From Macrostomum lignano (taxonomy: Eukaryota), in contig NIVC01001388.1 of the NCBI GenBank assembly GCA_002269645.1, positions 234,441 to 298,440 on the forward strand: a DNA stretch of 64,000 bases, written 5' to 3'. Within the stretch, counting starts at the first letter, position 1, and every line of letters begins with the position of its first letter. Positions 2,854 to 30,727 of this stretch are shown piece after piece. The position numbers and the translations under genes were made by a program. The notes beneath the pieces were generated by a model. The model had not been told where the DNA came from. It was given only the letters and a program-made list of their open reading frames with translations, and did no database searches.

Positions 2854-2854
2854 G

Positions 2855-3352: not shown

Positions 3353-3353
3353 G

Positions 3354-3416
<63 letters not shown>

Positions 3417-4244: not shown

Positions 4245-4572
4245 TAGAGATTAGATACTCAAGAACATCTAGAGAATAGATACTCGGACATCTAGAAATT
4301 AGATACTCGGACATATCTAGACCAGATACTCAGGCATCTATAGACCAGATACTCGGACATCTCTAGACCAGATACTAGACATGTATAGACCAGATACTCG
4401 GACATCTATAGACCAGATACTAGACACCTAGAGACCAGATACTCAGACATCTATAGACCAGATACTCAGACATCTATAGACCAGGTACTCAGACATCTAT
4501 AGACCAGATACTCAGACATCTATAGACCAGATACTCAGACATCTATAGACCAGATACTCGGACATCTAGAGA
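4245..4572. repeat. 23-bp minisatellite (ACTCAGACATCTATAGACCAGAT)
   Basis: Read directly; degenerate at the 5' end. Confidence 0.9.
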
Positions 4573-5098: not shown

Positions 5099-5950
5099 AT
5101 GTGTGTCAGCACACTCAATATAGGTGTGTCAGCACACTCAATATAGGTGTGTCAGCACACTCAGTATAGGTGTGTCAGCACACTCAGTATAGGTGTGTCA
5201 GCACACTCAGTATAGGTGTGTCAGCACACTCAGTATAGGTGTGTCAGCACACTCAGTATAGGTGTGTCAGCACACTCAGTATAGGTGTGTCAGCACACTC
5301 AATATAGGTGTGTCAGCACACTCAGTATAGGTGTGTCAGCACACTCAGTACAAGTGTGTCAGCACACTCAATATAGATGTGTCAGCACACTCAATATAGG
5401 TGTGTCAGCATGCACAATCAATATAGGTGTGTCAGCACACTCAGTATAGGTGTGTCAGCACACTCAGTATAAGTGTGTCAGCACACTCAATATAGGTGTG
5501 TCAGCACACTCAGTACAAGTGTGTCAGCACACTCAATATAGATGTGTCAGCACACTCAATATAGGTGTGTCAGCATGCACAATCAATATAGGTGTGTCAG
5601 CACACTCAGTATAGGTGTGTCAGCACACTCAGTATAAGTGTGTCAGCACACTCAATATAGGTGTGTCAGCACACTCAGAAGTGTGTCAGCACACCAGTAT
5701 ACATGTGTCAGCACACTCAGAAGTGTGTCAGCACACCAGTATACATGTGTCAGCACACTCAGAAGTGTGTCAGCACACCAGTATACATGTGTCAGCACAC
5801 TCAGAAGTGTGTCAGCACACCAGTATACATGTGTCAGCACACCAGTATACATGTGTCAGCACACTCAAAAGTGTGTCAGCACACCAGTATACGTGTCAGC
5901 ACACTCAAAAGTGTGTCAGCACACCAGTATACATGTGTCAGCACACTCAG
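5099..5950. repeat. 23-bp minisatellite (GTGTGTCAGCACACTCAGTATAG) changing to a dimeric variant at the 3' end
   Basis: Read directly. It explains the MCQHTQ-type ORFs. Confidence 0.95.
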
Positions 5951-5975
5951 CAGCCTTACTGTCCTGACCCCGCAG

Positions 5976-6410
5976 GCGGCAGGTGAACTGGCCTCCACAG
6001 GCAGCGGCGGCAGTGGGGCAGCCTTCCGGCACGTCGGTTTCGCTGGCGAACTGGCCGACAACGAGTCAAAGAGCAGCGGCTGGAAGCGCCGGGACACGCC
6101 GCACTACAATAAGAATGCGAAAATCACCAAGTGCCAGGACTCCGAGTTCGCTGCCCAGCTGCTGCAGAAGTACGGAGCCGGCGGCAGGCGCGCGGTGTCG
6201 GAGTCAAGCGGCGGCGGCGCCAGCGCTCGAAGCCCCAGCGAGGCCGGCGATGGTTACGAATTCGACGCGGCGTCCCTGTCGGCGGTTGCCAAGCAGCAGC
6301 TCACGGTTGTGTTGGAGAGGCAGGCGGGCGCGCAGCTGGGTCTCAGCATCGCTGGCGGTGTGGGATCGCAGCCGTGGCTGCCTGAAGATAATGGCATTTT
6401 CCTGAGCAAG
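5976..6410 (+). CDS. scrib: Scribble-like exon: RHVGF and KRRDTPHY motifs plus N-terminal half of PDZ1
   Basis: Acceptor ccgcag|GCG, donor AAG|gtcggg. QLGLSIAGGVGSQPWLPEDNGIFLSK is typical of Scribble PDZ1. Confidence 0.9.
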
Positions 6411-6477
6411 GTCGGGTCCGATATCTGTGTCAGGCTTCTTCTCTTCCGAACCACCGCTGCCCTCCCAGATCCGCCGT

Positions 6478-7128
6478 TGCTGGGCCAGCCTCCCAGAGTG
6501 TCAGTTGTTGGCCCAGCCTCCCAGAGTGTCAGTTGTTGGCCCAGCCTCCCAGAGTGTCAGTTGTTGGCCCAGCCTCCCAGAGTGTCAGTTGCTGGGCCAG
6601 CCTCCCAGAGTTTCAGTTGCTGGCCCAGCCTCCCAGAGTGTCAGTTGCTGGGCCAGCCTCCCAGAGTGTCAGTTGTTGGCCCAGCCTCCCAGAGTGTCAG
6701 TTGCTGGCCCAGCCTCCCAGAGTGTCAGTTGCTGGGCCAGCCTCCCAGAGTTTCAGTTGCTGGCCCAGCCTCCCAGAGTGTCAGTTGCTGGCCCAGCCTC
6801 CCAGAGTGTCAGTTGCTGGGCCAGCCTCCCAGAGTGTCAGTTGCTGGGCCAGCCTCACAGATCCTCAGTTTCTGGCCCAGCCTCCCAGAGTGTCAGTTGC
6901 TGGGCCAGCCTCCCAGATCCTCAGTTTCTGGCCCAGCCTCCCAGAGTGTCAGTTGCTGGGCCAGCCTCCCAGATTCTTGGTTGCTGGGCCAGCCTCCCAG
7001 ATTCTTGGTTGCTGGGCCAGCCTCCCAGATTCTTGGTTGCTGGGCCAGCCTCCCAGATTCTTGGTTGCTGGGCCAGCCTCCCAGATTCTTGGTTGCTGGG
7101 CCAGCCTCCCAGATCCTCAGTTGCTGGG
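6478..7128. repeat. 28-bp minisatellite (GGCCCAGCCTCCCAGAGTGTCAGTTGCT), in the intron splitting PDZ1
   Basis: Read directly; 28-aa periodicity in overlapping ORFs. Confidence 0.95.
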
Positions 7129-7175
7129 CATCAATAGATGATGAAATATAGCCTGCCAAAATCCCCTCACCCCAG

Positions 7176-7463
7176 GTGATCGATGGTTTCCCAGCCTACT
7201 CGGCCGGCCTTCGCCCCGGTGACCGGTTGCTAAGCGTCTGCGGCGTCTCCCTGGTAACGGCCAGCCACGCCGAGGCTGTCAAAGCGATTCAGTCGGCCGG
7301 TCAGCGACTCGAGCTGCAAGTCGAGCGTCACCTGACAGTGCCAAAGGCGAGAGACGGGGATGTCAGAGAGGAAAACAACGGAGAGCCTGCCGAAGCAGCC
7401 GAAAAAGATAAAGAAGATGAAGATAAAGACCGGCGCAGCGAGGCGGAGGCTGAGGAAGATGAG
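7176..7463 (+). CDS. scrib: Scribble-like exon: C-terminal half of PDZ1 plus acidic linker
   Basis: Acceptor accccag|GTG. AGLRPGDRLLSVCGVSLVTASHAEAVKAIQSAGQRLELQVER. Donor GAG|gttgga is weaker than the others. Confidence 0.87.
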
Positions 7464-7531
7464 GTTGGAGTGTAGTAGAAAATCTTTCCACTATTTTTTA
7501 CTTTCCGCGCAATCAAACCAAGCCAGTACAT

Positions 7532-8087
7532 AGGGTAAGAGTAGGGTCAGTAGGGTGAGAGTAGAGTCATTAGGGTGAGAGTAGAGTCAGTAGGGTGAGA
7601 TTAAGGGCAGTAGGGTGGGTTTAAGGTCAGTAGGGTGAGATTAGTGTCAGTAGGGTAAGATTAGGGCTAGTAGGGTGAGATTAGGGTCAGTAGGATGAGA
7701 TTTAGGTCAGTAGGATGAGATTAAGGTCAGTAGGGTGAGATTAAGGTCAGTAGGGTAAGATTAGGGCCAGTAGGGTGAGATTAGGGTCAGTAGGGTGAGA
7801 TTAGGGTCAGTAGGGTAAGATTAGGGTCAGTAGGGTGAGATTAGGGTCAGTAGGGTGAGATTAGGGTCAGTAGGGTGAGATTAGGGTCAGTAGGGTAAGA
7901 TTAGGGTCAGTAGGGTAAGATTAGGGTCAGTAGGGTGAGATTAGAGTCAGTAGGGTGAGATTCGTGTTAGATTAGGGTCAGTAGGGTGAGATTAGGGTCA
8001 GTAGGGTAAGATTAGGGTCAGTAGGGTAAGATTAGGGTCAGTAGGGTGAGAGCAGGGTCAGTATGATGAGGGTAGGGTCAGTAGGGC
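7532..8087 (+). repeat. 20-bp G-rich minisatellite (TAGGGTGAGATTAGGGTCAG) containing TTAGGG
   Basis: Read directly. Confidence 0.95.
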
Positions 8088-8258
8088 AAGCATTTTTAAC
8101 ATACTGAGCTAGACCAGAGTATTAACTTAATGCTTTACTGTTAGTAGTCATGCAGGCATTAGAAATTCTATACTTCTATACGCAATGTGTGCACAATGGC
8201 TGCATCAATGTAAATTGGATGTGCAACCGAAGTCAACGCTACAATTTGCCAATTGCAG

Positions 8259-8414
8259 AGCCCCAGACCTTTGCCAAGTCGGGGCAGTCTGGAGCGACTA
8301 CACGATATTGGAAAATTTGGCGGCAAGAAGATAAAACGATTTCAACCAGACAACGACAATGGCCCGGACACTGAAGCAGATGGAGATGCCGCTGAGTCGC
8401 TGTGGCTTTGTCAG
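8259..8414 (+). CDS. scrib: Scribble-like exon (non-PDZ linker at the position PDZ2 normally occupies)
   Basis: Acceptor ttgcag|AGC, donor CAG|gtaata, phase 0/0. SPRPLPSRGSLERLHDIGKFGGKKIKRF... Confidence 0.72.
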
Positions 8415-8478
8415 GTAATAATTGGCCCCTGCATGGTATACGGCGTTGTGTGGTTTCTCACCCTACATTTTATTGCTC

Positions 8479-9033
8479 AGTAGGGTGAGGGGTAGAGGGA
8501 GTAGGGTGAGGGGTAGAGGGAGTAGGGTGAGGGGTAGAGGGAGTAGGGTGAGGGGTAGAGGGAGTAGGGTGAGGGGTAGAGGGAGTAGGGTGAGGGGTAG
8601 AGGGAGTAGGGTGAGGGGTAGAGGGAGTAGGGTGAGGGGTAGAGGGAGTAGGGTGAGGGGTAGAGGGAGTAGGGTGAGGGGTAGAGGGAGTAGGGTGAGG
8701 GGTAGAGGGAGTAGGGTGAGGGGTAGAGGGAGTAGGGTGAGGGGTAGAGGGAGTAGGGTGAGGGGTAGAGGGAGTAGGGTGAGGGGTAGAGGGAGTAGGG
8801 TGAGGGGTAGAGGGAGTAGGGTGAGGGGTAGAGGGAGTAGGGTGAGGGGTAGAGGGAGTAGGGTGAGGGGTAGAGGGAGTAGGGTGAGGGGTAGAGGGAG
8901 TAGGGTGAGGGGTAGAGGGAGTAGGGTTAGGGGTAGAGGGAGTAGGGTGAGGGGTAGAGGGAGTAGGGTGAGGGTAGAGGAGTAGGGTGAGGGGTAGAGG
9001 GAGTAGGGTGAGGGGTAGAGGGAGTAGGGTGAG
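8479..9033 (+). repeat. 21-bp G-rich minisatellite (TAGGGTGAGGGGTAGAGGGAG), near-perfect
   Basis: Read directly. It explains the RVRGRGS/LPLPLTL ORFs. Confidence 0.97.
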
Positions 9034-9116
9034 CAGGTTGAGAGGTAAAGTAGGCGAGGTGATAGCCACTCGCTCTCCCACAAACCACAGTCCTGTATAT
9101 AAAATATCCCACCCAG

Positions 9117-9753
9117 CAACCGCAGCCGGCCCGAGAGCAGACCGCCCCAGTCGCCATTGAAAGCCCCGACAAGCAAGCGGCGGCTGACCAACCGGAAGAG
9201 TCGCTAGCAGACCAAGACTCGATTCCGCTCGGACCAGACGAGGTTTGCATCGAGCTGCAGCCGGACTCGAGCGGCCGGCTCGGACTGTCCATCTGCGGCA
9301 GCTGCGACCGGCCGGCGCACCCCTTCGGAGTCGGCCTGTACGTCAGCCGCCTGACCCCCGGCCTGCCCGCCGCCAGCTCCGGCCTGAAAGTCGGCGACCG
9401 GCTGCTCAGCGCCAACGGGCGCAGCCTCGCCAGAGCCGCCCATCGCGAGGCCATCGCCGCCATGCGGGCGACGCCCGATGGCTCTGGCGGCGTCCTTCGA
9501 CTCCGGGTGCGGCACGAGCCGCCGCCTGCCGGCTATCGCTGCCTGCGCATCCCCCTTCCGGCGCCGGCGGCCGCAGCGAAACCCGCCAGTGCCGCCGCTG
9601 TGGCCGCCGTCGCCAGGCCCAGGCTCGGCATCGCCGTCTGCGGTGGCGCCGGCTCGCCGCCAGCCAATCCCGACGACCCAACAGACGAAGGCGTCTTCGT
9701 TGCCAAGGTGTCGCCAGGCGGATTGTTCCACTCTGATGGACAGCTGAAGACTG
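9117..9753 (+). CDS. scrib: Scribble-like exon: PDZ3 and N-terminal half of PDZ4
   Basis: Acceptor acccag|CAA, donor G|gtgagt. LGLSICGSCDRPAHPFGVGLYVSRL...GLKVGDRLL...RHEPPP (PDZ3). LGIAVCGGAGSPPANPDDPTDEGVFVAKVSPGG matches the Scribble PDZ4 NPxDPTDEG signature. Confidence 0.92.
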
Positions 9754-9764
9754 GTGAGTTGCTA

Positions 9765-10053
9765 CCTGCCCTGTCACCCCCTCTGTCTGCCCTCCGTCAC
9801 CTTTCTGTCTGCCCTCCGTCACCCACATTACCTGCCCTCCGTCAATCTCGGCCTGCCCTCCGTCAATCTCGGCCTGCCCTCCGTCAATCTCGGCCTGCCC
9901 TCCGTCAATCTCGGCCTGCCCTCCGTCAATCTCGGCCTGCCCTCCGTCAATCTCGGCCTGCCCTCCGTCAATCTCGGCCTGCCCTCCGTCAATCTCGGCC
10001 TGACCTCCGTCAATCTCGGCCTGCCCTCCGTCAATCTCGGCCTGCCCTCCGTC
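9765..10053. repeat. 21-bp minisatellite (CTGCCCTCCGTCAATCTCGGC)
   Basis: Read directly. Confidence 0.95.
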
Positions 10054-10065
10054 ATAGTTATAAAA

Positions 10066-10247
10066 ATTAAACTCCGCTACATATCGGCAGCTCATTCATT
10101 GCAATCGCAAAATTAAACTACGCTACATATCGGCAGCTCATTCATTGCAATCGCAAAATTAAACTACGCTACATATCGGCAGCTCATTCATTGCAATCGC
10201 AAAATTAAACTACGCTACATATCGGCAGCTCTTTCATTGCAATCGCA
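10066..10247. repeat. 46-bp tandem repeat, about 4 copies
   Basis: ATATCGGCAGCTC recurs at 10081 and 10127, then at further 46-bp steps. Confidence 0.9.
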
Positions 10248-17200: not shown

Positions 17201-18535
17201 TCAGAGTGACGCCTCGCTGCACTCGAGAACCTCCAGGCCTGTTCCTGGCCCCTCAGGCTCCGCCGGAGAAGCCAGTCGCCGCTGCCGCTGCTGCTGTCGG
17301 TGCTCGTAGCCGATGGTCGCCCAAATCGGTCTCTCCGTGGCGGTCAGCTGACTGGCCAACAACAGCTGCTGCTGAGACTGGGCTGAGCGCAGACTCTGCA
17401 GAGTCCGGAGAGAGTTTCTCCTGGGATCTGAGAGCAGCAGCCGCTGCTGATGCTGATGATGGTGAGGCCGCTGGCAGCCACAGCTGCCGCCGTCCAACCA
17501 GCTTGGCGGCACCTGCTCCGGCGTAGAGAAACCGGCGGAGTCGGACTGGCCGCTGGGAGGCCGCCGCCGGAACCGAAATCTGGCCGCCGCCGACGCCGGC
17601 CGCTGAACCGGCATCCGGTAGAACAGCTGGTCCCAGAAGTCGCGCTGTCCGAATCGCAGCACCACCGCGGCGGCGGCGCCCGAACCGCCTGGCAGGGTCG
17701 GCCAGCGGGACAGCATCGACGTGGACAACGATGTCGGTTTGGCGGGCGTCGGCGGCTGCGGCGGCACCGCCACCACGCAGACGAGGCGTCGGCGGGAGAG
17801 CGGCTCTCCTAGGCAGTCGGCGGCCGCGGCGAACAGCCCGCGCATCTCCGCGTCGGCCGCGAAGCTCGGCGTCACCACGGCGACAACTCGTCGACTGGTG
17901 GCGACGACCTCGGCGACAGTCGGGAAAGCCGGCAGGCCCGGCAAGCGGGCACGCTGGTGGCAGCACAGCGAGTGCCCGCGGCGCAGCAGCTCGGAGGCCA
18001 GCTCGCTGGACACCCAGTCGCCGTCTGTCGGGTGGAACAGCAGGCAGGCATCGCAGCGCTTGCCCTCGCCCGGACAGTCGTCCCTGTCCAGCGGGTGGAA
18101 GCCCCAGCGTGCGTAGAGGCGCACCCGGAATGAGGCGGCCAGCAGCAGCAGGAGGCCGGCCGCGGCCGCCGCGGCTGCCACCAACAGGAGCGACGCCCCG
18201 ACGCCGCAGGCCAGCAGGCGGGCGATGAACAGGCGACGCCGCGAGGCCTCCGAGGCGGACGACATTGACGACGAAGTCGAAGAAGAAGCGGACTTCGGCG
18301 GAGTGTCCGGACAGAGGTCCCGTGGCGACAGGCGCCGCAGCTGCCGGCCAGTCAGGCGACGTGGCGAAGCGCAGCGAGCGTCGGCATCGGAGCCGCGGCT
18401 GGCGAGCCAGTCCGGCAGCCAGGCCGTGCCGGCGCAGTCACAACGCCACGGGTTGCCATGGAGACGGATGTCGCGAAGCCGCCAGAGATGCGTCAGGCTG
18501 GCGACCCGGGGATCGAGCCGGGCAAGGCGGTTGTT
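17201..18535 (-). CDS. Toll-like receptor exon 2: last LRR, LRRCT, transmembrane helix, TIR domain and Ser/Gln-rich tail
   Basis: Acceptor ctttcag|AAC. GNPWRCDC...RCASP (LRRCT), then a hydrophobic TM, then RLYARWGFHPLDRDDC, a TIR with CDACLLF, DWV, LCCHQRARLPG and SRRVVAVVTPSF, and FWDQL. Stop at 17201-17203. Confidence 0.92.
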   Translation of the reverse strand, partial: NNRLARLDPRVASLTHLWRLRDIRLHGNPWRCDCAGTAWLPDWLASRGSDADARCASPRRLTGRQLRRLSPRDLCPDTPPKSASSSTSSSMSSASEASRRRLFIARLLACGVGASLLLVAAAAAAAGLLLLLAASFRVRLYARWGFHPLDRDDCPGEGKRCDACLLFHPTDGDWVSSELASELLRRGHSLCCHQRARLPGLPAFPTVAEVVATSRRVVAVVTPSFAADAEMRGLFAAAADCLGEPLSRRRLVCVVAVPPQPPTPAKPTSLSTSMLSRWPTLPGGSGAAAAVVLRFGQRDFWDQLFYRMPVQRPASAAARFRFRRRPPSGQSDSAGFSTPEQVPPSWLDGGSCGCQRPHHHQHQQRLLLSDPRRNSLRTLQSLRSAQSQQQLLLASQLTATERPIWATIGYEHRQQQRQRRLASPAEPEGPGTGLEVLECSEASL

Positions 18536-18865
18536 CTGAAAGCAGACGGGGTTGCTTGCTTTCGATTCAGTGAGGTTCTGATTGCGATTGTGTCCGGGTG
18601 AAAGTACGAGGGGCATCCCAGAAGTCCGTTCGGTATGTGCCGTTTTTACCATAAACGACGAGTAAAGAGCTCAACCGCTCACGGTTAAGTTTTTAAACTT
18701 TCCTGTTGCACTGTTGCGTTTTTTCGGTGACTGGACGGACTTTTGGGATGCCCCTCGTATGTGTGCCATGGCCGGGAGACTCTCGTTCCATGCGGGCTCA
18801 AATTTCGGCCATTGTTTAACTTAGCAACATGCTAAACAATATGGCTACAATCTAAGGCTAAAAAC

Positions 18866-18912
18866 CAAGGACCACTAGAAGTTACCGTAACGGTAACTTC
18901 TAGTGGTCCTTG
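18866..18912. mobile_element. 47-bp perfect palindrome flanked by an 8-bp direct repeat (CTAAAAAC): minimal MITE or transposon remnant
   Basis: CAAGGACCACTAGAAGTTACCGT-A-ACGGTAACTTCTAGTGGTCCTTG. CTAAAAAC at 18858-18865 and 18913-18920. Confidence 0.75.
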
Positions 18913-19372
18913 CTAAAAACTCCAGGAGTGACATTGCATATGGCTACAAACCCGGAAGTGACATTGCATATGGCTACAAACCCGGGAGTGACATTGCATA
19001 TGGCTACAAACCCGGGAGTGACATTGCATATGGCTACAAACCCCAGGAGTGACATTGCATATGGCTACAAACGCGGGAGTGACATTGTATATGGCTACAA
19101 ACCCGGGAGTGACATTGCATATGGCTACAAACCCCAGGAGTGACATTGCATATGGCTACAAACGCGGGAGTGACATTGCATATGGCTACAAACCCAGGAG
19201 TGACATTGCATATGGCTACAAACCCGGGAGTGACATTGCATATGGCTACAAACCCGGGAGTGACATTGCATATGGCTACGAACCCAGGAGTGACATTGCA
19301 TATGGCTACAAACCCGGGAGTGACATTGCATATGGCTACAAACCCAGGAGTGACATTGCATATGGCTGCAAA
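18913..19372. repeat. 30/31-bp minisatellite (GGAGTGACATTGCATATGGCTACAAACCCG) in the TLR intron
   Basis: Read directly. Confidence 0.96.
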
Positions 19373-19482
19373 GCTCATTTGTTGAAAATGATGGGCAAAT
19401 AAAGAAGCTGATTTGATATTTAAAATTCTTGGACTTTGTCAGCGGGTACGTGGATTTCGGGCCAAAAATCTCAGCCACTCGC

Positions 19483-20841
19483 CTGCAAGTCCAGCAGTTC
19501 CAGACGCTCCAGGCGGCTCAAAAATTTCACCGGCAGCTCCTCAAGTCCGGTGTCACTCAAGTCGAGCGACTCAGCGTTGCGAAACACGTCGGGCATGCCC
19601 GGCAGGCTGGCGGGCAGCTGGCCACCGCTGAAGTTGAACCGGTAGGCGAAGCCATCGCCGAGGCGCGGCAGCTCACGCCGGTGCGGCAGCCGGTCCAGCC
19701 GAGCCCCCGAGCAGTCAACGCTCACCGCGCGTCGCCAGGGCTCAACTGAGCAGACGCACCTGTTGCCGACGCACCGGTCGGTGCAGACCAGATCCGAGCG
19801 CGGGTCCAGCTCGAGCCGGTAGCCGGCCGAGTAGATTATACGTCCAAGTAGATTCGGGGGGCTGTGACACGGTGGCAGCACCGTGTACTTCAACAGCAAG
19901 CTGCTGACATTGCCCGCTGACGAGTTGTACAGTCGGTAGTCTCTGCAGTCGCAGCTGAGCGGGTTGCCAGCCAGATTTGAGAACACCAGAGCACTCCGCT
20001 CGCCCAGCTGTCTGATCACCTCGCCATCGATTTCCCAACCGTCCAGGAGGTCCGTCAGGCTGACGATTCGGTTCTGCGACAAGCTGATCTCCAGTTTGAT
20101 CTCCGACAGGTGGCAGTGCGACCACCAGGCTCGAGGTGACACCCGCTGTAGCCTCGAGCCGCAGCCGTCAGTGAAGAAGTCGAAATCGCCGCCTTCCAAG
20201 CTGAAATTGGCGATGCGGTTGTTGTCCAGCACCAGCACGAGTCGCTTGTCGAAATTCTGTCGCCGAATCAGCAGCGGCCAGGCGGTCAGCGAGTCCAAGG
20301 AGTTGTTGGTCAAGTTGATCTTGTTGAGCCTGACGCCGTGGAAGGCGGCTGAGGAGATCCGCGTGATGCGGTTTCTCGCCAGGCTGAGCAGCTCGAGTCC
20401 CTGCAGTGCGAGGCTGCCCGGTCCCAAAGATTCGAGCCTGTTCGAATCGAGCACCAGGTGTTTAAGCTGGGGGAAGCCATGTGAGGAAAACGCACCGGCT
20501 GGCAGGCTGGAGATCCGATTGTCGCTGAGATCCAGGTACTTCAGCCGGGGAATCCTGCGCAGCTGATCAACCAGGTGCAGCACCTGCGGTCCGATCCGAG
20601 TCAGCGAGATCACCAGGTTTTCGGCCACGCCGCCTGCGCAGCCAAGCAGCGGGCGCAGGCTCTCAGCAGCTCCGGGCGCGAAGCCGCAGTCGGCAGCCAG
20701 ATGTCCCTGACCAAATTCGTACTTCCAGCTGCACCGGCACTGGCTGCTCGGGAAGAACCGCTGGCAGTCTTCCAGCTGCCCGATGGCGAGTGACCCAGCC
20801 CCTAGAAGCAGCAACACAAGCAGCAGACCAGAAGCTAGCAT
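19483..20841 (-). CDS. Toll-like receptor exon 1: signal peptide, LRRNT, LRRs, internal LRRCT (GNPLSCDC), second LRRNT and LRRs (mccTLR/protostome-type ectodomain)
   Basis: ATG at 20841 (MLASGLLLVLLLLGAGSLAIG). LKYLDLSDNRISSL, LKHLVLDSNRLESL and LELLSLARNRITRI are LRRs. CVCSV...VDCSGARLDRLP is the second LRRNT. Exon ends CAG|gcgagt and joins exon 2 as LELLDLQ-NNRLARL. Total 897 aa. Confidence 0.9.
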
Positions 20842-21889
20842 TGTCAACAATTTTTGAGCGTACAACTCTTTGCTTGCCAGAGCTTAAGTCGGTTGGTTTT
20901 AACTCTGGCCGCGGGCACAATGTCCCAGCCATAAATCTTGCAGCCCAGTCTCTGCCCGAACTGCCAAACGCTTCAAACCCTCGTCGTCCAATCCGCGATC
21001 GAGTGAGCATGAGTTTGTTCTCTCGCTATGGCGCAGGCGTACCTTGCCAAAAAAAACTTATTAGCAGATGAGGCACGATGCGTCTGAGAGGAGGGCAGAT
21101 GTGGCTTAGTCGGGCCAACCGTTGTTGGGAAGTTTTTGTTTCCCTCCCAGGTCCAGAAGAAAAACCCGCTCAGCTCTAGCCTCTCTCTGGCTGGGCCGGT
21201 GGAGCCCCGCAAATTCTGTTCTTCTGCCGGCGCAGTACCGCCGTATTTTATTTAGCAAAGAAGCTACGAGAGACTGTTTGAGTGAACCGAGGTGGCCTAT
21301 AAAGGCACAGTCTGGATTGAGCAGCGCTTCTCCAAAAGTGTCCGTTTTTTTAGCTACATCATTTTTTCTCTAATCAGTTCTGAGACACTTCGCCTCATTT
21401 CTTAGAAAGTCTTCAAAAGTATTCGAACTAGCAGTAAAAAAATTGCCACCACAATCTCTCTCCGAATTTTTGTTGAAAATCTCCTTGACTAAGTTGGCAC
21501 AGGGGCGAGAGTTTTCTTTGTTTTTAGCCAGCCACGATAAATTATGCATTTTGTTGGCATGTGGTGCGGACGCCCCGTTAAAGTCTCCGGTGCAGCCAAT
21601 TGATGTAGAAAGTCATTTGTGAAAACTGTTCTATAGTGCTTGTTATTTAGCTTATTGTTGCAGTTCCTGATTGAAAGCTCTAATTAGCTACCTGGCAATA
21701 TTTTGTACGGCTTCCCACCTTGTCAATACATCAATGTAACCGGAGAAAATTGTTCTCAAAAGTTGTTAAAAGCAACACTTTATAGACTGCTTGGAATTTT
21801 CCTGCTTTACTCAATTTTACATATGAAATCGTTGGCAGAATAAAGGTAAAGTGAAGTTTTTTAAAGTTGGCTGCTAGCAGACCCGATCT

Positions 21890-22447
21890 TAACCCAGGAG
21901 TGACATTGCATATGGTACAAACCCAGGAGTGACATTGCATATGGTACAAACCCGGGAGTGACATTGCATATGGTACAAACCCGGGAGTGACATTGCATAT
22001 GGCTACAAACCCGGGAGTGACATTGCATATGGCTACAAACCCGGGAGTGACATTGCATATGGCTACAAACCCCAGGAGTGACATTGCATATGGCTACAAA
22101 CCCGGGAGTGACATTGCATATGGCTACAAACCCGGGAGTGACATTGCATATGGCTACAAACCCCAGGAGTGACATTGCATATGGCTACAAACCCGGGAGT
22201 GACATTGCATATGGCTACAAACCCCAGGAGTGACATTGCATATGGCTACAAACCCGGGAGTGACATTGCATATGGCTACAAACCCGGGAGTGACATTGCA
22301 TATGGCTACAAACCCCAGGAGTGACATTGCATATGGCTACAAACCCGGGAGTGACATTGCACATGGCTACAAACCCCAGGAGTGACATTGCATATGGCTA
22401 CAAACCCCAGGAGTGACATTGCATATGGCTACGATCCCGGGAGTGAC
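21890..22447. repeat. Second array of the same 30/31-bp minisatellite, about 1 kb upstream of the TLR ATG
   Basis: Same unit and orientation as 18913-19372. Confidence 0.96.
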
Positions 22448-23117
22448 ACAATTGAAACAACCAAGTGGTTATGCCAGTAATAGGATTTCTCCATAAAACA
22501 CACCAGCATCTGAGAAGTCGCACTCTAAAAAGTCACGAGAGCTCATTAGCCAAAAGCAAAGTGCAATTCGCGCAACTTTAAAGTGCAAAAAAGATTGCAG
22601 AAATTTCAAGTAAAACCGGTTGGCTGAATAAATTTTCACTGATCGATTTCGCCGGAACACGCGCAAACGTTTCACACATTGACAGCCCGAAGCAGAATTT
22701 CCTTTTGGCATTTAATTTGCTTTTTCGTCGGCTAATCCGGAGGCCAAGTGACTCAGAAATGAAGCAGAATTGTCTTGAGCTTCCCAGCAAAGAGCCGGTC
22801 AATTTTTAAGAACAAACTGCCTGAATTTTCCAACCAATTTTTGTACGTCTTTTACTTCTTATCGATTGTCAACTTTTTTGCTGAATTGCAAAGTGTCAAT
22901 TCTTAGCGGCCATTGCAACTCTCTTTAGTGCCTTCTCTTTCTCATATGAGTTGCTCAAAAAATGGCAGATCTTGTTGATTCCATTCTCTGTTCATTTCTG
23001 ACTCAGCAAGCTGCGACAGACACGGCTGGGGTTGACTGAGCAGACAGTGAGTCTTTAAACTGTAAAAATTCAACTATGGCTAAACATATTTTTAGAACCT
23101 CTCTCACTTTAATAAGG

Positions 23118-26100
23118 AGGCAGTTTTACACAGTTGGAGTTGCATTACCAACAGGCAGTTTTACACAGTTGGAGTTGCATTACCAACAGGCAGTTTTACA
23201 CAGTTGGAGTTGCATTACCAACAGGCAGTTTTACACAGCTGGAGTTGCATTACCAACAGGCAGTTTTACACAGTTGGAGTTGCATTACCAACAGGCAGTT
23301 TTACACAGTTGGAGTTGCATTACCAACAGGCAGTTTTACACAGCTGGAGTTGCATTACCAACACACAGTTTTACAGTTGGAGTTGCATTACCAACACACA
23401 GTTTTACACAGCTGGAGTTGCATTACCAACAGGCAGTTTTACACAGCTGGAGTTGCATTACCAACACACAGTTTTACACAGCTGGAGTTGCATTACCAAC
23501 ACACAGTTTTACACAGCTGGAGTTGCATTACCAACACACAGTTTTACACAGTTGGAGTTGCATTACCAACAGGCAGTTTTACACAGCTGGAGTTGCATTA
23601 CCAACACACAGTTTTACACAGCTGGAGTTGCATTACCAACAGGCAGTTTTACACAGCTGGAGTTGCATTACCAACACACAGTTTTACACAGCTGGAGTTG
23701 CATTACCAACAGGCAGTTTTACAGTTGGAGTTGCATTACCAACACACAGTTTTACACAGCTGGAGTTGCATTACCAACAGGCAGTTTTACACAGCTGGAG
23801 TTGCATTACCAACAGGCAGTTTTACAGTTGGAGTTGCATTACCAACACACAGTTTTACACAGCTGGAGTTGCATTACCAACAGGCAGTTTTACAGTTGGA
23901 GTTGCATTACCAACACACAGTTTTACACAGCTGGAGTTGCATTACCAACACACAGTTTTACACAGCTTGAGTTGCATTACCAACAGGCAGTTTTACACAG
24001 CTGGAGTTGCATTACCAACACACAGTTTTACACAGCTGGAGTTGCATTACCAACAGGCAGTTTTACACAGCTGGAGTTGCATTACCAACACACAGTTTTA
24101 CACAGCTGGAGTTGCATTACCAACAGGCAGTTTTACACAGCTGGAGTTGCATTACCAACACACAGTTTTACACAGTTGGAGTTGCATTACCAACACACAG
24201 TTTTACACAGCTGGAGTTGCATTACCAACAGGCAGTTTTACACAGCTGGAGTTGCATTACCAACACACAGTTTTACACAGCTGGAGTTGCATTACCAACA
24301 GGCAGTTTTACACAGCTGGAGTTGCATTACCAACACACAGTTTTACACAGCTGGAGTTGCATTACCAACAGGCAGTTTTACACAGTTGGAGTTGCATTAC
24401 CAACACACAGTTTTACACAGCTGGAGTTGCATTACCAACAGGCAGTTTTACACAGCTGGAGTTGCATTACCAACACACAGTTTTACACAGCTGGAGTTGC
24501 ATTACCAACACACAGTTTTACACAGCTGGAGTTGCATTACCAACAGGCAGTTTTACACAGCTGGAGTTGCATTACCAACACACAGTTTTACACAGTTGGA
24601 GTTGCATTACCAACACACAGTTTTACACAGCTGGAGTTGCATTACCAACAGGCAGTTTTACAGTTGGAGTTGCATTACCAACACACAGTTTTACACAGCT
24701 GGAGTTGCATTACCAACACACAGTTTTACACAGCTGGAGTTGCATTACCAACAGGCAGTTTTACACAGCTGGAGTTGCATTACCAACACACAGTTTTACA
24801 CAGCTGGAGTTGCATTACCAACAGGCAGTTTTACACAGCTGGAGTTGCATTACCAACACACAGTTTTACACAGCTGGAGTTGCATTACCAACAGGCAGTT
24901 TTACACAGCTGGAGTTGCATTACCAACACACAGTTTTACACAGCTGGAGTTGCATTACCAACAGGCAGTTTTACACAGCTGGAGTTGCATTACCAACACA
25001 CAGTTTTACACAGCTGGAGTTGCATTACCAACAGGCAGTTTTACACAGCTGGAGTTGCATTACCAACACACAGTTTTACACAGCTGGAGTTGCATTACCA
25101 ACAGGCAGTTTTACACAGCTGGAGTTGCATTACCAACACACAGTTTTACACAGCTGGAGTTGCATTACCAACAGGCAGTTTTACACAGCTGGAGTTGCAT
25201 TACCAACACACAGTTTTACACAGTTGGAGTTGCATTACCAACACACAGTTTTACACAGCTGGAGTTGCATTACCAACAGGCAGTTTTACACAGCTGGAGT
25301 TGCATTACCAACACACAGTTTTACACAGCTGGAGTTGCATTACCAACAGGCAGTTTTACACAGCTGGAGTTGCATTACCAACAGGCAGTTTTACACAGCT
25401 GGAGTTGCATTACCAACAGGCAGTTTTACACAGCTGGAGTTGCATTACCAACACACAGTTTTACACAGCTGGAGTTGCATTACCAACACACAGTTTTACA
25501 CAGTTGGAGTTGCATTACCAACAGGCAGTTTTACACAGCTGGAGTTGCATTACCAACACACAGTTTTACACAGCTGGAGTTGCATTACCAACAGGCAGTT
25601 TTACACAGCTGGAGTTGCATTACCAACACACAGTTTTACACAGCTGGAGTTGCATTACCAACAGGCAGTTTTACACAGCTGGAGTTGCATTACCAACACA
25701 CAGTTTTACACAGCTGGAGTTGCATTACCAACAGGCAGTTTTACACAGCTGGAGTTGCATTACCAACACACAGTTTTACACAGCTGGAGTTGCATTACCA
25801 ACAGGCAGTTTTACACAGCTGGAGTTGCATTACCAACACACAGTTTTACACAGCTGGAGTTGCATTACCAACAGGCAGTTTTACACAGCTGGAGTTGCAT
25901 TACCAACACACAGTTTTACACAGCTGGAGTTGCATTACCAACAGGCAGTTTTACACAGCTGGAGTTGCATTACCAACAGGCAGTTTTACACAGCTGGAGT
26001 TGCATTACCAACACACAGTTTTACAGTTGGAGTTGCATTACCAACACACAGTTTTACACAGCTGGAGTTGCATTACCAACAGGCAGTTTTACACAGCTGG

Positions 26101-29100
26101 AGTTGCATTACCAACACACAGTTTTACACAGCTGGAGTTGCATTACCAACAGGCAGTTTTACACAGCTGGAGTTGCATTACCAACACACAGTTTTACACA
26201 GCTGGAGTTGCATTACCAACAGGCAGTTTTACACAGCTGGAGTTGCATTACCAACACACAGTTTTACACAGCTGGAGTTGCATTACCAACAGGCAGTTTT
26301 ACACAGCTGGAGTTGCATTACCAACACACAGTTTTACACAGCTGGAGTTGCATTACCAACAGGCAGTTTTACACAGCTGGAGTTGCATTACCAACACACA
26401 GTTTTACACAGCTGGAGTTGCATTACCAACAGGCAGTTTTACACAGCTGGAGTTGCATTACCAACACACAGTTTTACACAGCTGGAGTTGCATTACCAAC
26501 AGGCAGTTTTACACAGCTGGAGTTGCATTACCAACACACAGTTTTACACAGCTGGAGTTGCATTACCAACACACAGTTTTACACAGCTGGAGTTGCATTA
26601 CCAACAGGCAGTTTTACACAGCTGGAGTTGCATTACCAACACACAGTTTTACACAGTTGGAGTTGCATTACCAACACACAGTTTTACACAGCTGGAGTTG
26701 CATTACCAACAGGCAGTTTTACAGTTGGAGTTGCATTACCAACACACAGTTTTACACAGCTGGAGTTGCATTACCAACACACAGTTTTACACAGCTGGAG
26801 TTGCATTACCAACAGGCAGTTTTACACAGCTGGAGTTGCATTACCAACACACAGTTTTACACAGCTGGAGTTGCATTACCAACAGGCAGTTTTACACAGC
26901 TGGAGTTGCATTACCAACACACAGTTTTACACAGCTGGAGTTGCATTACCAACAGGCAGTTTTACACAGCTGGAGTTGCATTACCAACACACAGTTTTAC
27001 ACAGCTGGAGTTGCATTACCAACAGGCAGTTTTACACAGCTGGAGTTGCATTACCAACACACAGTTTTACACAGCTGGAGTTGCATTACCAACAGGCAGT
27101 TTTACACAGCTGGAGTTGCATTACCAACACACAGTTTTACACAGCTGGAGTTGCATTACCAACAGGCAGTTTTACACAGCTGGAGTTGCATTACCAACAC
27201 ACAGTTTTACACAGCTGGAGTTGCATTACCAACAGGCAGTTTTACACAGCTGGAGTTGCATTACCAACACACAGTTTTACACAGTTGGAGTTGCATTACC
27301 AACACACAGTTTTACACAGCTGGAGTTGCATTACCAACAGGCAGTTTTACACAGCTGGAGTTGCATTACCAACACACAGTTTTACACAGCTGGAGTTGCA
27401 TTACCAACAGGCAGTTTTACACAGCTGGAGTTGCATTACCAACAGGCAGTTTTACACAGCTGGAGTTGCATTACCAACAGGCAGTTTTACACAGCTGGAG
27501 TTGCATTACCAACACACAGTTTTACACAGCTGGAGTTGCATTACCAACACACAGTTTTACACAGTTGGAGTTGCATTACCAACAGGCAGTTTTACACAGC
27601 TGGAGTTGCATTACCAACACACAGTTTTACACAGCTGGAGTTGCATTACCAACAGGCAGTTTTACACAGCTGGAGTTGCATTACCAACACACAGTTTTAC
27701 ACAGCTGGAGTTGCATTACCAACAGGCAGTTTTACACAGCTGGAGTTGCATTACCAACACACAGTTTTACACAGCTGGAGTTGCATTACCAACAGGCAGT
27801 TTTACACAGCTGGAGTTGCATTACCAACACACAGTTTTACACAGCTGGAGTTGCATTACCAACAGGCAGTTTTACACAGCTGGAGTTGCATTACCAACAG
27901 GCAGTTTTACACAGCTGGAGTTGCATTACCAACACACAGTTTTACACAGCTGGAGTTGCATTACCAACACACAGTTTTACACAGCTGGAGTTGCATTACC
28001 AACAGGCAGTTTTACACAGCTGGAGTTGCATTACCAACACACAGTTTTACACAGTTGGAGTTGCATTACCAACACACAGTTTTACACAGCTGGAGTTGCA
28101 TTACCAACAGGCAGTTTTACACAGCTGGAGTTGCATTACCAACACACAGTTTTACACAGCTGGAGTTGCATTACCAACAGGCAGTTTTACACAGCTGGAG
28201 TTGCATTACCAACAGGCAGTTTTACACAGCTGGAGTTGCATTACCAACAGGCAGTTTTACACAGCTGGAGTTGCATTACCAACACACAGTTTTACACAGC
28301 TGGAGTTGCATTACCAACACACAGTTTTACACAGTTGGAGTTGCATTACCAACAGGCAGTTTTACACAGCTGGAGTTGCATTACCAACACACAGTTTTAC
28401 ACAGCTGGAGTTGCATTACCAACAGGCAGTTTTACACAGTTGGAGTTGCATTACCAACACAGTTTTACACAGCTGGAGTTGCATTACCAACAGGCAGTTT
28501 TACACAGCTGGAGTTGCATTACCAACACACAGTTTTACACAGCTGGAGTTGCATTACCAACAGGCAGTTTTACACAGCTGGAGTTGCATTACCAACAGGC
28601 AGTTTTACACAGCTGGAGTTGCATTACCAACACACAGTTTTACACAGTTGGAGTTGCATTACCAACACACAGTTTTACACAGCTGGAGTTGCATTACCAA
28701 CAGGCAGTTTTACACAGCTGGAGTTGCATTACCAACACACAGTTTTACACAGCTGGAGTTGCATTACCAACACAGTTTTACACAGCTGGAGTTGCATTAC
28801 CAACACACAGTTTTACACAGCTGGAGTTGCATTACCAACAGGCAGTTTTACACAGTGGAGTTGCATTACCAACACACAGTTTTACACAGCTGGAGTTGCA
28901 TTACCAACAGGCAGTTTTACACAGCTGGAGTTGCATTACCAACACAGTTTTACACAGCTGGAGTTGCATTACCAACAGGCAGTTTTACACAGCTGGAGTT
29001 GCATTACCAACACACAGTTTTACACAGCTGGAGTTGCATTACCAACACACAGTTTTACACAGCTGGAGTTGCATTACCAACAGGCAGTTTTACACAGTGG

Positions 29101-30727
29101 AGTTGCATTACCAACAGGCAGTTTTACACAGCTGGAGTTGCATTACCAACACACAGTTTTACACAGCTGGAGTTGCATTACCAACACACAGTTTTACACA
29201 GCTGGAGTTGCATTACCAACAGGCAGTTTTACACAGCTGGAGTTGCATTACCAACACACAGTTTTACACAGCTGGAGTTGCATTACCAACACACAGTTTT
29301 ACACAGCTGGAGTTGCATTACCAACACACAGTTTTACACAGCTGGAGTTGCATTACCAACACACAGTTTTACACAGCTGGAGTTGCATTACCAACACACA
29401 GTTTTACACAGCTGGAGTTGCATTACCAACACACAGTTTTACACAGCTGGAGTTGCATTACCAACACACAGTTTTACACAGCTGGAGTTGCATTACCAAC
29501 AGGCAGTTTTACACAGCTGGAGTTGCATTACCAACACACAGTTTTACACAGCTGGAGTTGCATTACCAACAGGCAGTTTTACACAGTTGGAGTTGCATTA
29601 CCAACACACAGTTTTACACAGCTGGAGTTGCATTACCAACAGGCAGTTTTACACAGCTGGAGTTGCATTACCAACACACAGTTTTACACAGCTGGAGTTG
29701 CATTACCAACAGGCAGTTTTACACAGTTGGAGTTGCATTACCAACACACAGTTTTACACAGCTGGAGTTGCATTACCAACAGGCAGTTTTACACAGCTGG
29801 AGTTGCATTACCAACAAGCAGTTTTACACAGCTGGAGTTGCATTACCAACAGGCAGTTTTACACAGTTGGAGTTGCATTACCAACACACAGTTTTACACA
29901 GCTGGAGTTGCATTACCAACAGGCAGTTTTACACAGTTGGAGTTGCATTACCAACAGGCAGTTTTACACAGCTGGAGTTGCATTACCAACAGGCAGTTTT
30001 ACACAGTTGGAGTTGCATTACCAACAGGCAGTTTTACACAGCTGGAGTTGCATTACCAACAGGGAGTTTTACAGTTGGAGTTGCATTACCAACAGGCAGT
30101 TTTACAGTTGGAGTTGCATTACCAACACACAGTTTTACACAGCTGGAGTTGCATTACCAACACACAGTTTTACACAGCTGGAGTTGCATTACCAACAGGC
30201 AGTTTTACACAGTTGGAGTTGCATTACCAACACACAGTTTTACACAGCTGGAGTTGCATTACCAACAGGCAGTTTTACACAGCTAGAGTTGCATTACCAA
30301 CACACAGTTTTACACAGTTGGAGTTGCATTACCAACAGGCAGTTTTACACAGCTGGAGTTGCATTACCAACAGGCAGTTTTACACAGTTGGAGTTGCATT
30401 ACCAACACACAGTTTTACACAGCTGGAGTTGCATTACCAACAGGCAGTTTTACACAGCTGGAGTTGCATTACCAACACACAGTTTTACACAGTTGGAGTT
30501 GCATTACCAACAGGCAGTTTTACACAGCTGGAGTTGCATTACCAACAGGCAGTTTTACACAGCTGGAGTTGCATTACCAACACACAGTTTTACACAGTTG
30601 GAGTTGCATTACCAACAGGCAGTTTTACACAGTTGGAGTTGCATTACCAACAGGCAGTTTTACACAGCTGGAGTTGCATTACCAACACACAGTTTTACAC
30701 AGCTGGAGTTGCATTACCAACAGGCAG
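23118..30727. repeat. 7.6-kb satellite, 35-bp unit CAGTTTTACACAGCTGGAGTTGCATTACCAAC(AGG/ACA); two variants mostly alternating
   Basis: Read directly, about 217 units, with occasional 33-bp deletion variants. Source of the 2200-2600 aa artefact ORFs. Confidence 0.98.

What the first reader, a model, noticed from the sequence alone, without database searches (positions are those of the whole stretch)
17201..20841. Complete multiple-cysteine-cluster Toll-like receptor in what looks like a flatworm-style genome
Seen: signal peptide, LRRNT, LRR block, internal LRRCT plus LRRNT, further LRRs, LRRCT, TM, TIR and tail in one intact 897-aa two-exon frame. The ORF track splits it into two unrelated-looking ORFs. 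Established: this is the Drosophila-Toll/protostome mccTLR layout, and canonical TLRs are generally reported as absent from studied flatworms (planarians, parasitic groups). Inference: the genome style suggests a Macrostomum-like flatworm. If so, this is a retained, highly diverged TLR that homology surveys could miss.
Basis: partly seen in the sequence, partly recalled or inferred. Interest (0 to 1): 0.8.

Follow-up and report, generated by a model that had tools for sequence, protein, structure and literature searches.

The report
Unannotated Toll-like receptor in Macrostomum lignano
The flatworm Macrostomum lignano, from a phylum reported to have lost all Toll-like receptors, carries an intact but very diverged and unannotated two-exon gene for a complete Toll-type receptor, so the loss may have come later in flatworm evolution than published surveys say.

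Summary
On the minus strand, ATG 20841 to TGA 17201 encodes an 897-aa protein in two exons (20841-19483 and 18535-17201).

The protein contains, in order:
- signal peptide
- LRRNT
- about 9 LRRs
- LRRCT
- LRRNT
- about 4 LRRs
- LRRCT
- transmembrane helix
- TIR
- Q/H-rich tail

The only junction that keeps the LRR register uses a non-canonical GC-AG intron.

The window is the last 64 kb of M. lignano contig NIVC01001388.1 (Mlig_3_7), matched at 100% over 28 kb. No protein with this sequence, and no close paralogue, is in the libraries searched, so the gene appears unannotated.

The TIR barely passes Pfam (21.7 vs 21.3 bits). It nevertheless keeps boxes 1-3, aligns end to end with protostome Toll TIRs, and its nearest relatives by sequence search and predicted fold are mostly TLR TIRs.

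Published surveys list 0 TLRs for M. lignano and none for Platyhelminthes. Those surveys ran TIR profiles on predicted proteins, which explains the miss.

Expression, the splice junction, paralogues, MyD88 and signalling were not testable here.

Verdict: a new member of a known family in an unexpected phylum. The gene is probably real; its function is inferred.

The parts
19483..20841 (-). Coding exon 1 (residues 1-453): signal peptide, LRRNT, first LRR block, internal LRRCT + LRRNT, start of second LRR block
   Evidence: ATG 20841 follows an in-frame TAA at 20886-20884. GC at codon positions 1/2/3 is 0.63/0.45/0.79.
20779..20841 (-). Signal peptide (residues 1-21, MLASGLLLVLLLLGAGSLAIG)
   Evidence: Kyte-Doolittle 19-residue window scores 1.9-2.4. 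Helix 2-19 in the model. Cleavage site not predicted with a dedicated tool.
20638..20766 (-). N-terminal cysteine cluster, LRRNT-1 (C26, C35, C37, C52, C68)
   Evidence: Cysteine map. Poorly modelled, pLDDT below 50, so this is the weakest of the four clusters.
19957..20625 (-). First LRR block (residues 73-295, about 9 repeats; the last four are irregular)
   Evidence: Pfam LRR_8 E=5e-22 and LRR_4 E=7e-17. Motif scan. pLDDT 84-95 for residues 80-180.
19783..19956 (-). Internal LRRCT (NPLSCDC...C325...C353)
   Evidence: Aligns with the NPxxCDC...C...C module of arthropod, nemertean and nematode Tolls. The second half is modelled at low confidence.
19711..19773 (-). Internal LRRNT (C357-x4-C362-x-C364-x12-C377)
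   Evidence: Aligns with CPxxCxC...C followed by S..L..LP in mcc Tolls. pLDDT 85-92.
18536..19482 (-). Intron, 947 nt, GC-AG type (CAG|GCGAGT ... CTGCTTTCAG|AAC), GC 47%; holds a 30-bp minisatellite (18912-19372) and a 41-bp perfect palindrome (18869-18909)
   Evidence: The neighbouring NFAT5-like gene appears to use GT-AG introns, inferred from tblastn exon boundaries. No RNA evidence was available.
17201..18535 (-). Coding exon 2 (residues 454-897 plus TGA): end of second LRR block, LRRCT, Ser-rich linker, TM, TIR, tail
   Evidence: GC at codon positions 1/2/3 is 0.70/0.60/0.82.
18311..18448 (-). Membrane-proximal LRRCT (WRCDC...C508...C528)
   Evidence: C485, C487, C508 and C528 fall in invariant or near-invariant columns of the TLR alignments. 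Matches LRRC15, LRIG1 and VLR LRRCTs in solved structures. pLDDT 86-95.
18119..18232 (-). Transmembrane helix (residues 555-592) followed by the juxtamembrane motif RVRLYARWG
   Evidence: Hydropathy up to 2.65. Helix 567-597. The motif aligns with RVWLHSRYG of the arthropod Tollo/long-Toll-type hits.
17600..18058 (-). TIR domain (residues 613-765): box 1 CDACLLFH, box 2 HQRARLPG, box 3 FWDQLFYRMP, with a 17-residue insert before box 3
   Evidence: Pfam TIR 21.7 bits vs cut-off 21.3; TIR_2 21.6 bits, below its cut-off of 28. Alignment. Protostome-Toll HMM 39.3 bits over residues 17-175 of the 195-residue query. Library-wide best E=1.8e-10. Model pLDDT 72, pTM 0.69, with a beta-alpha pattern of five strands. 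Foldseek matches at E <= 0.001 are all TIR domains.
17204..17599 (-). C-terminal tail (residues 766-897), low complexity, Q/H/R-rich
   Evidence: No Pfam match. pLDDT below 50. GC3 still 0.75.

Best explanation
This is a real, intact, currently unannotated gene of Macrostomum lignano. It encodes a type I membrane receptor of the Toll/TLR family with the multiple-cysteine-cluster (protostome-type) ectodomain. Shown: the reading frame, the domain order, the species, and the TLR affinity of the TIR. Inferred from what is established for Drosophila Toll, Aedes Toll5A and vertebrate TLRs: the short horseshoe ectodomain (about 13 LRRs in two capped blocks) binds an extracellular protein ligand. For mcc Tolls that ligand is typically an endogenous Spaetzle-like cystine-knot protein rather than a microbial molecule. 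Ligand-driven dimerisation brings the two TIR domains together. The BB loop, whose proline is kept in RARLPG, then recruits a TIR adaptor. MyD88 and SARM are reported from the planarian Schmidtea mediterranea (PMC7958881); I did not check M. lignano. The output could be immune, or developmental/neuronal as for Toll-6/7/8 and C. elegans TOL-1; the sequence does not decide this.
For: Species and locus. Frame and junction. Architecture. Collinear 711-column alignment to a tick TLR across the exon junction, E=5e-17. Every hit of the whole-protein search that covers at least 65% of the query is an LRR receptor, and most carry Pfam TIR (e.g. Tollo of Amphibalanus, 79% coverage). TIR: it keeps the conserved columns D615, D624, L636, C644, R648, F753 and W754 and boxes 1-3. 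An exhaustive scan of 1.84 billion representatives gives 81 hits. Six of the ten top hits scanned are LRR+TIR proteins, and the named hits are TLRs or Tolls of annelids, insects and amphioxus plus uncharacterised crinoid, annelid and wasp proteins. PDB sequence ranking puts TLR15/2 (2e-7), TLR1 and TLR6 ahead of IL-1RAcP (0.02) and MyD88 (0.23). Predicted folds: the whole protein best matches TLR5, Drosophila Toll-Spaetzle and Aedes Toll5A; the TIR matches Hydra TRR-2, TLR15, TLR1 and TLR6. Native and under recent constraint: GC3 is 0.80 against GC2 0.53 and intron GC 0.47, matching neighbouring exons of NFAT5-like (0.81) and Scribble-like (0.76) genes. There is no stop or frameshift in 897 codons.
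Against: No transcript evidence of any kind was available. The donor is GC, not GT. The TIR is only just above the Pfam cut-off, fails TIR_2, has Asp to Ala in box 2, Cys/Cys in place of the aromatic residues of box 1, and a 17-residue insert. No orthologue or paralogue closer than about 37% local identity exists in the libraries searched, so purifying selection could not be measured. The ectodomain is unusually short, and residues 190-355 are modelled poorly. The structure models were built from alignments made of TLRs, which biases them towards TLR folds. Presence of MyD88, Pelle/IRAK, Spaetzle or NF-kB in M. lignano was not tested.
Confidence: 0.7

Rival explanations
1. It is a relic: a TLR gene that is silent or no longer signals (young pseudogene or pseudo-receptor). 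It is kept open by chance or by a function of the ectodomain only, so flatworms are in effect still without Toll signalling.
For: The TIR is borderline in Pfam, and its box 1 and box 2 are altered. No matching gene model turned up in the protein libraries, which hold at least some deposited proteins of this assembly. If that annotation is transcript-based (my recollection, not checked), absence could mean low expression. No close relative was found anywhere.
Against: The 897 codons carry no stop or frameshift. Codon-position GC asymmetry is strong throughout and highest in the TIR (GC3 0.89). All four cysteine clusters, the BB-loop proline and the box 3 FW are intact. Annotation is sparse in this region in any case: the Scribble-like exons at 1420-10067 also have no identical protein in the library, so absence of a model says little.
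Confidence: 0.17
2. It is two separate genes and not one: an LRR-only secreted protein from the upstream ORF, and a TIR-only membrane protein from the downstream ORF. This would be like the split 'TLR-like' proteins of Hydra and those reported for flatworms.
For: Each ORF is open on its own, and the second has an ATG at 18652. The intron donor is non-canonical. The 2021 survey reports TLR-like (LRR-only, TIR-only) proteins in platyhelminths.
Against: Unspliced, ORF 1 would end three residues into a broken LRR with no C-terminal cap. ORF 2 would start without a signal peptide, yet carry half an LRR and a four-cysteine LRRCT that must be extracellular. The spliced junction restores the repeat exactly, and homologous TLRs align straight across it.
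Confidence: 0.05
3. It is not a flatworm gene: contamination, assembly chimera or recent horizontal acquisition.
For: There is no close relative in any flatworm data searched. The best matches are arthropod, annelid and deuterostome proteins.
Against: It lies inside a 298-kb contig between Scribble-like and NFAT5-like genes of M. lignano. It shares their GC3-rich exon and AT-richer intron style. The same 30-bp minisatellite lies in its intron and 1 kb upstream. Identity to any foreign protein is only 16-37%, so there is no donor candidate.
Confidence: 0.03

Closest known systems
Protostome multiple-cysteine-cluster Tolls (Drosophila Toll, Toll-6/7/8 (Tollo), Aedes Toll5A; tick and barnacle TLRs found here: P0051, P0006)
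   Same: Same domain order: SP, LRRNT, LRRs, LRRCT, LRRNT, LRRs, LRRCT, TM, TIR, tail. The internal cysteine module aligns. The juxtamembrane motif RVRLYARWG and box 3 FWDQLFYRMP resemble RVWLHSRYG and FWEKLRYAMPD. An HMM of these proteins covers the whole TIR at 39.3 bits, against 26 bits over the first half for an HMM of vertebrate TLRs. The best fold matches include 4lxr and 7b1c.
   Different: Only 16-27% identity. The ectodomain is about 530 aa with about 13 LRRs, against 750-1000 aa and more than 20 LRRs. It lacks the extended HCFxLCxCCxFDACDCEMTCP cluster of arthropod Tolls and resembles the short form of the tick and nemertean proteins. Box 2 is RARLPG instead of RDxxPG. There is a 17-residue insert before box 3.
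C. elegans TOL-1 and other single-copy TLRs of TLR-poor lineages (nematodes, tardigrades, the rotifer Epiphanes senta)
   Same: A lone, diverged mcc TLR in a lineage otherwise poor in Toll-pathway parts. The TOL-1 ectodomain (8suf) is among the sequence and fold matches. Nematode TIR proteins appear in the hit list.
   Different: No specific affinity to the nematode proteins was shown. TOL-1 is much longer. Copy number in M. lignano is unknown.
TLR-like proteins of flatworms and Hydra (LRR-only and TIR-only; Hydra TRR-2)
   Same: These are what earlier surveys report for Platyhelminthes. The Hydra TRR-2 TIR is the top fold match of this TIR.
   Different: Here the LRRs, the TM and the TIR are in one reading frame after one splice. 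That meets the survey authors' own definition of a TLR (TIR + TM + at least one LRR).

Membership tests
Toll-like receptor (as defined by Orus-Alcalde 2021 / Brennan and Gilmore: LRR + TM + TIR in one protein) | Extracellular leucine-rich repeats | tested here: met
   Pfam LRR_8 E=5e-22, LRR_4 E=7e-17, LRR_1 above cut-off. Motif scan. High-confidence LRR solenoid for residues 80-180 and 360-530.
Toll-like receptor | N-terminal signal peptide and a single transmembrane helix between ectodomain and TIR (type I topology) | tested here: met
   Hydropathy shows only two hydrophobic segments, 1-24 and 554-593. Helices in the model. No dedicated SP/TM predictor was available.
Toll-like receptor | Cytoplasmic TIR domain | tested here: met
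   PF01582 at 21.7 bits against a gathering score of 21.3, so barely. Supported by E=1.8e-10 in the exhaustive scan, PDB TLR15/2 at 2e-7, the protostome-Toll HMM at 39.3 bits over the whole domain, and TIR-only fold matches with TM-score normalised by target of 0.6-0.8. TIR_2 is below its cut-off.
Toll-like receptor | TIR boxes 1, 2 (BB loop with proline) and 3 (FW) | tested here: met
   Box 1 is CDACLLFH (Asp kept, aromatic residues replaced). Box 2 is HQRARLPG (Arg, Pro and Gly kept, Asp to Ala). Box 3 is FW, kept. The match is partial at the residue level.
Toll-like receptor | TIR belongs to the TLR clade rather than MyD88, SARM, IL-1R or TIR-only clades | tested here: inconclusive
   Similarity rankings favour TLRs, but margins over IL-1RAcP and MyD88 are modest in fold space. 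No phylogeny with outgroups was made.
Multiple-cysteine-cluster (P-type) TLR | At least two LRRCT modules, one of them internal and followed by an LRRNT | tested here: met
   C297/299/325/353 followed by C357/362/364/377, then C485/487/508/528. These align to the same modules of arthropod, nematode and nemertean Tolls. Pfam itself reports only a weak LRRCT at 506-524.
Toll-like receptor | The two exons are joined in a mature mRNA and the protein is made | not testable with these tools
   No M. lignano RNA data were reachable. Exact look-ups of both ORF products found nothing. The spliced protein could not be looked up.
Toll-like receptor | Signals through a TIR adaptor (MyD88) to a kinase and transcription factor | not testable with these tools
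IL-1 receptor family | Immunoglobulin ectodomain with TIR | tested here: not met
   No Ig domain in Pfam; the ectodomain is LRR.

The most novel reading that the evidence does not exclude
Macrostomum lignano retains a functional canonical Toll receptor inherited from the spiralian ancestor. Platyhelminthes would then not have lost TLRs at their origin. The loss would have happened after Macrostomorpha split from the lineage leading to planarians and parasitic flatworms. A genetically tractable, regenerating flatworm would become available for studying Toll signalling.
Probability: 0.55. Interest if true: 0.72.

Novelty: new member of a known kind. Interest (0 to 1): 0.64.

Why it matters
Two metazoan-wide surveys (PMC8609888, PMC10279657) and reviews of planarian immunity (PMC7958881) treat Platyhelminthes as a phylum without TLRs. 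The first lists M. lignano explicitly with zero and uses it to argue for loss early in flatworm evolution. An intact LRR-TM-TIR gene in that same species would move the inferred loss to a later node. It also shows that 'absence' there partly reflects missing gene models and a TIR at the edge of profile detection. M. lignano supports RNAi (e.g. PMC12732829) and, from my own knowledge, transgenesis, so a role in immunity, regeneration or development could be tested directly. The finding does not add a new kind of molecule.

Tried and rejected
- **Exact look-ups of the two ORF products:** nothing on record. This is uninformative, because gene callers may pick other starts and the libraries seem to hold no transcriptome-derived M. 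lignano proteins. The NFAT5-like hit came from NCBI/UniRef only.
- **Whole-protein homologue search:** dominated by LRR proteins such as chaoptin and artichoke. I therefore searched the TIR alone, exhaustively.
- **Alternative splice with a canonical GT donor (19479/18558):** rejected. It inserts 8 residues into an LRR and uses an acceptor without a pyrimidine tract. The pair 19531/18535 deletes 16 residues and breaks the repeat.
- **Full-length structure model:** mean pLDDT only 65.9, and TM-scores to Toll ectodomains are low (0.25-0.33). It supports the kind of fold but not its details.
- **Literature searches for a reported M. lignano TLR or MyD88:** none found. The acoel and apoptosis papers were irrelevant.
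- **MyD88 search in M. lignano:** not attempted. Any query I could supply would fill the 120-row output with vertebrate or other proteins.
- **TIR phylogeny:** not made. No outgroup sequences could be obtained from the tools, and the long branch would make a neighbour-joining tree unreliable.
Full report
**1. What is in the sequence**

On the minus strand there are two long ORFs, 19471..20865 and 17201..18652. The first ATG after an in-frame TAA (20886-20884) is at 20841 and opens a hydrophobic leader. Joining 19483 to 18535 gives 1359 + 1335 nt in frame, encoding 897 aa and ending at TGA 17203-17201.

I listed every frame-compatible pair of GT/GC donors and AG acceptors.
- Only 19483/18535 rebuilds a leucine-rich repeat exactly: LELLDLQ|NNRLARL fits LxxLxLxxNxL.
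- Its acceptor has the best pyrimidine tract (CCCCGTCTGCTTTCAG).
- The donor is CAG|GCGAGT, so this is a GC-AG intron. The neighbouring NFAT5-like gene appears to use GT-AG, inferred from tblastn exon boundaries.
- The nearest canonical option, GT at 19479 with AG at 18558, would insert eight residues into the repeat.

The intron is 947 nt with 47% GC. It holds a 30-bp minisatellite and a 41-bp palindrome.

**2. Anatomy of the protein**

| Residues | Feature |
|---|---|
| 1-21 | Signal peptide |
| 26-68 | Cysteine cluster C26/35/37/52 (LRRNT, weakly supported) |
| 73-295 | About nine LRRs; the first five are regular and modelled at pLDDT 84-95 |
| 296-353 | Internal LRRCT: NPLSCDC...C325...C353 |
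| 357-377 | Internal LRRNT: C357-x4-C362-x-C364-x12-C377 |
| 398-482 | About four LRRs, crossing the exon junction |
| 483-528 | Membrane-proximal LRRCT: NPWRCDC...C508...C528 |
| 529-554 | Serine-rich linker |
| 555-592 | Transmembrane helix |
| 613-765 | TIR |
| 766-897 | Disordered Q/H/R-rich tail |

The internal LRRCT-LRRNT pair aligns with the same module in arthropod, nematode and nemertean Tolls. It takes the short form seen in a tick TLR and in a Lineus Toll-like protein. This is the multiple-cysteine-cluster (P-type) layout.

A single BLASTP alignment of 711 columns to the 892-aa tick TLR P0051 runs from residue 83 to 757. It passes through both LRR blocks, both caps, the TM and the TIR, and crosses the exon junction (25% identity, E=5e-17).

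**3. Is the TIR real, and of what kind?**

Pfam alone is marginal: PF01582 scores 21.7 bits against a gathering score of 21.3 and covers profile positions 14-73 only; TIR_2 scores 21.6 against 28. Other evidence is stronger.
- **Conserved columns.** In alignments with 27-34 TLRs the protein has the near-invariant residues D615, D624, L636, C644, R648, F753 and W754.
- **Boxes.** The three boxes are recognisable:
  - Box 1 is CDACLLFH, against (F/Y)DAF(I/V)SY.
  - Box 2 is HQRARLPG, against HxRDxxPG, with the BB-loop proline kept.
  - Box 3 is FWDQLFYRMP, against FWEKLRYAMPD.
- **Juxtamembrane motif.** RVRLYARWG resembles RVWLHSRYG of the arthropod Tollo/long-Toll-type hits.
- **Group HMMs.** An HMM built from 17 protostome mcc Tolls scores 39.3 bits and aligns the whole domain. 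One built from 8 vertebrate TLRs scores 26 bits over the first half only.
- **Exhaustive scan.** An HMMER scan of 1.84 billion cluster representatives found 81 proteins at E<=1e-3. The best was 1.8e-10, and none reached beyond 1e-10.
  - Of the ten top hits scanned, six are LRR+TIR proteins and the rest are TIR-only or multi-TIR.
  - The named hits are amphioxus TLR1, Arenicola TLR13 and TLR14, insect Toll-6 and Toll-like proteins, and uncharacterised proteins of the crinoid Antedon, the annelid Owenia and the wasp Bracon.
- **Solved structures by sequence.** The ranking is TLR15/2 (2e-7), TLR1, TLR6, Hydra TRR-2, TLR7, then IL-1RAcP (0.02) and MyD88 (0.23).
- **Predicted fold.** A TIR-only AlphaFold model (pLDDT 72, pTM 0.69) has the five-strand beta-alpha pattern with a disordered 17-residue insert before box 3. 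All its Foldseek matches at E<=0.001 are TIR domains, led by Hydra TRR-2, TLR15, TLR1, IL-1RAcPb, TLR6 and MyD88, with TM-score normalised by target of 0.6-0.8.
- **Whole protein.** The full model best matches TLR5, the Drosophila Toll-Spaetzle complex and Aedes Toll5A.

Caveat: both models were built from alignments of TLRs, and no phylogeny with outgroups was made.

**4. Whose genome is it?**

An exon at 44695-45048 is 100% identical to M. lignano BOX15_Mlig013822g1. That gene's locus on contig NIVC01001388.1 of GCA_002269645.1 (Mlig_3_7) matches window 33544-61735 at 100% over 28,192 bp. The window is therefore the last 64 kb of that 298,440-bp contig (window x = record x + 234440), and the TLR lies at about record 251641-255281.

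The gene sits between a Scribble-like gene (1420-10067, plus strand) and an NFAT5-like gene (44.7-51.7 kb, minus strand; E=7e-64 to human NFAT5). Its codon-position GC (0.66/0.53/0.80) matches its neighbours, for example the NFAT5-like IPT exon with GC3 0.81 and the Scribble-like PDZ exon with 0.76. The asymmetry is strongest in the TIR, at GC3 0.89. This argues for a native gene that has been under coding constraint at least until recently.

**5. Is it already known?**

No protein identical or close to it was found in the word-indexed search of the 5.8-billion-cluster library or in the exhaustive scan of 1.84 billion representatives. Exact look-ups of the two ORF products also found nothing. 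The gene therefore appears to be unannotated in the deposited assembly.

Annotation is sparse here in general. The Scribble-like exons also have no identical protein, so a missing model is not evidence of silence.

The literature held in the library says the following.
- Orus-Alcalde et al. 2021 list M. lignano with 0 TLRs and conclude that TLRs may have been lost early in platyhelminth evolution (PMC8609888).
- Their method was hmmsearch with a TIR profile against predicted proteins, then an LRR profile. That method cannot see an unannotated gene and would struggle with this TIR.
- Saco et al. 2023 found no TLR in Platyhelminthes (PMC10279657).
- Reviews say planarians have TIR-only and LRR-only proteins plus MyD88 and SARM, but no canonical TLR.
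- Four further searches found no report of a Macrostomum TLR.

**6. How it most likely works**

Shown: a single open frame after one splice, with type I topology and the LRR-TM-TIR domain order.

Inferred by analogy with Toll, Toll5A and vertebrate TLRs:
- ligand-induced dimerisation of the ectodomain, probably by an endogenous protein ligand as in other mcc Tolls;
- apposition of the TIRs;
- recruitment of a TIR adaptor through the BB loop.

Whether the output is immune or developmental cannot be read from the sequence. The altered box 1 and box 2 and the insert leave room for a weakened or changed interaction surface.

**7. Rivals**

- **Silent or non-signalling relic.** This is the main alternative (about 0.17). 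The open frame, intact cysteine clusters and GC3 asymmetry argue against it, but only expression data and dN/dS between copies can settle it.
- **Two separate genes.** Unlikely (about 0.05). Without splicing, ORF 1 would end inside an uncapped LRR, and ORF 2 would carry an extracellular LRRCT with no signal peptide.
- **Contamination or chimera.** Unlikely (about 0.03), given the flanking M. lignano genes, the shared composition, and the same minisatellite in the intron and 1 kb upstream.

**8. Verdict**

It is a new member of a known family, found in a phylum, and in the very species, for which the family has been published as absent. The gene is probably real; its function is inferred.

Interest is moderate to high for comparative immunology and flatworm biology. 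It is limited by the lack of expression and orthologue data.

Noticed in passing
window 23121-30722 and 32732-42379: Two very large minisatellite arrays: a 35-bp unit x 218 copies (7.6 kb) and a 19-bp unit x 516 copies (9.6 kb). The first produces spurious ORFs of up to 2578 aa. More than 30 further arrays make up a large share of the window.
   Followed up: no
window 1420-10067 (+): Exons of a Scribble/LAP-like gene: an LRR exon at 1420-1650 and PDZ exons at 7152-7340 and 9066-9780. The LRR exon and the 9066-9780 PDZ exon were searched, and no identical protein was found in the library, so this gene also looks unannotated in the deposited assembly.
   Followed up: partly
window 44695-51741 (-): NFAT5-like Rel-homology gene, BOX15_Mlig013822g1 (612 aa; RHD_DNA_bind + RHD_dimer). 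Best PDB match is human NFAT5 at 7e-64, far better than NF-kB p65/p50 at about 1e-7. It is therefore not the NF-kB that a Toll pathway would need.
   Followed up: partly
window 54222-54455 (+), next to the annotated GRDP-like gene at about 54458-59436: An ORF with a GRDP-like N-terminus (MASERIEKNFDPNTIEV...RYETMWLPLL) lies just outside the annotated 728-aa GRDP-like model (PF07173). It had no identical protein hit and may be a missed 5' exon.
   Followed up: no
window 18869-18909, 18912-19372 and 21891-22448: A perfect 41-bp palindrome (GGACCACTAGAAGTTACCGTTACGGTAACTTCTAGTGGTCC) sits next to the 30-bp minisatellite inside the TLR intron. The same minisatellite unit, in the same orientation, lies about 1 kb upstream of the TLR start, so exon 1 is bracketed by two arrays of one repeat family.
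   Followed up: partly
window 59331-59955 (both strands): A GC-rich 45-bp tandem repeat gives overlapping Gly/Cys-rich, Pro-rich and Ala-rich ORFs at the 3' end of the GRDP-like gene. The coding status of any of them is unclear.
   Followed up: no
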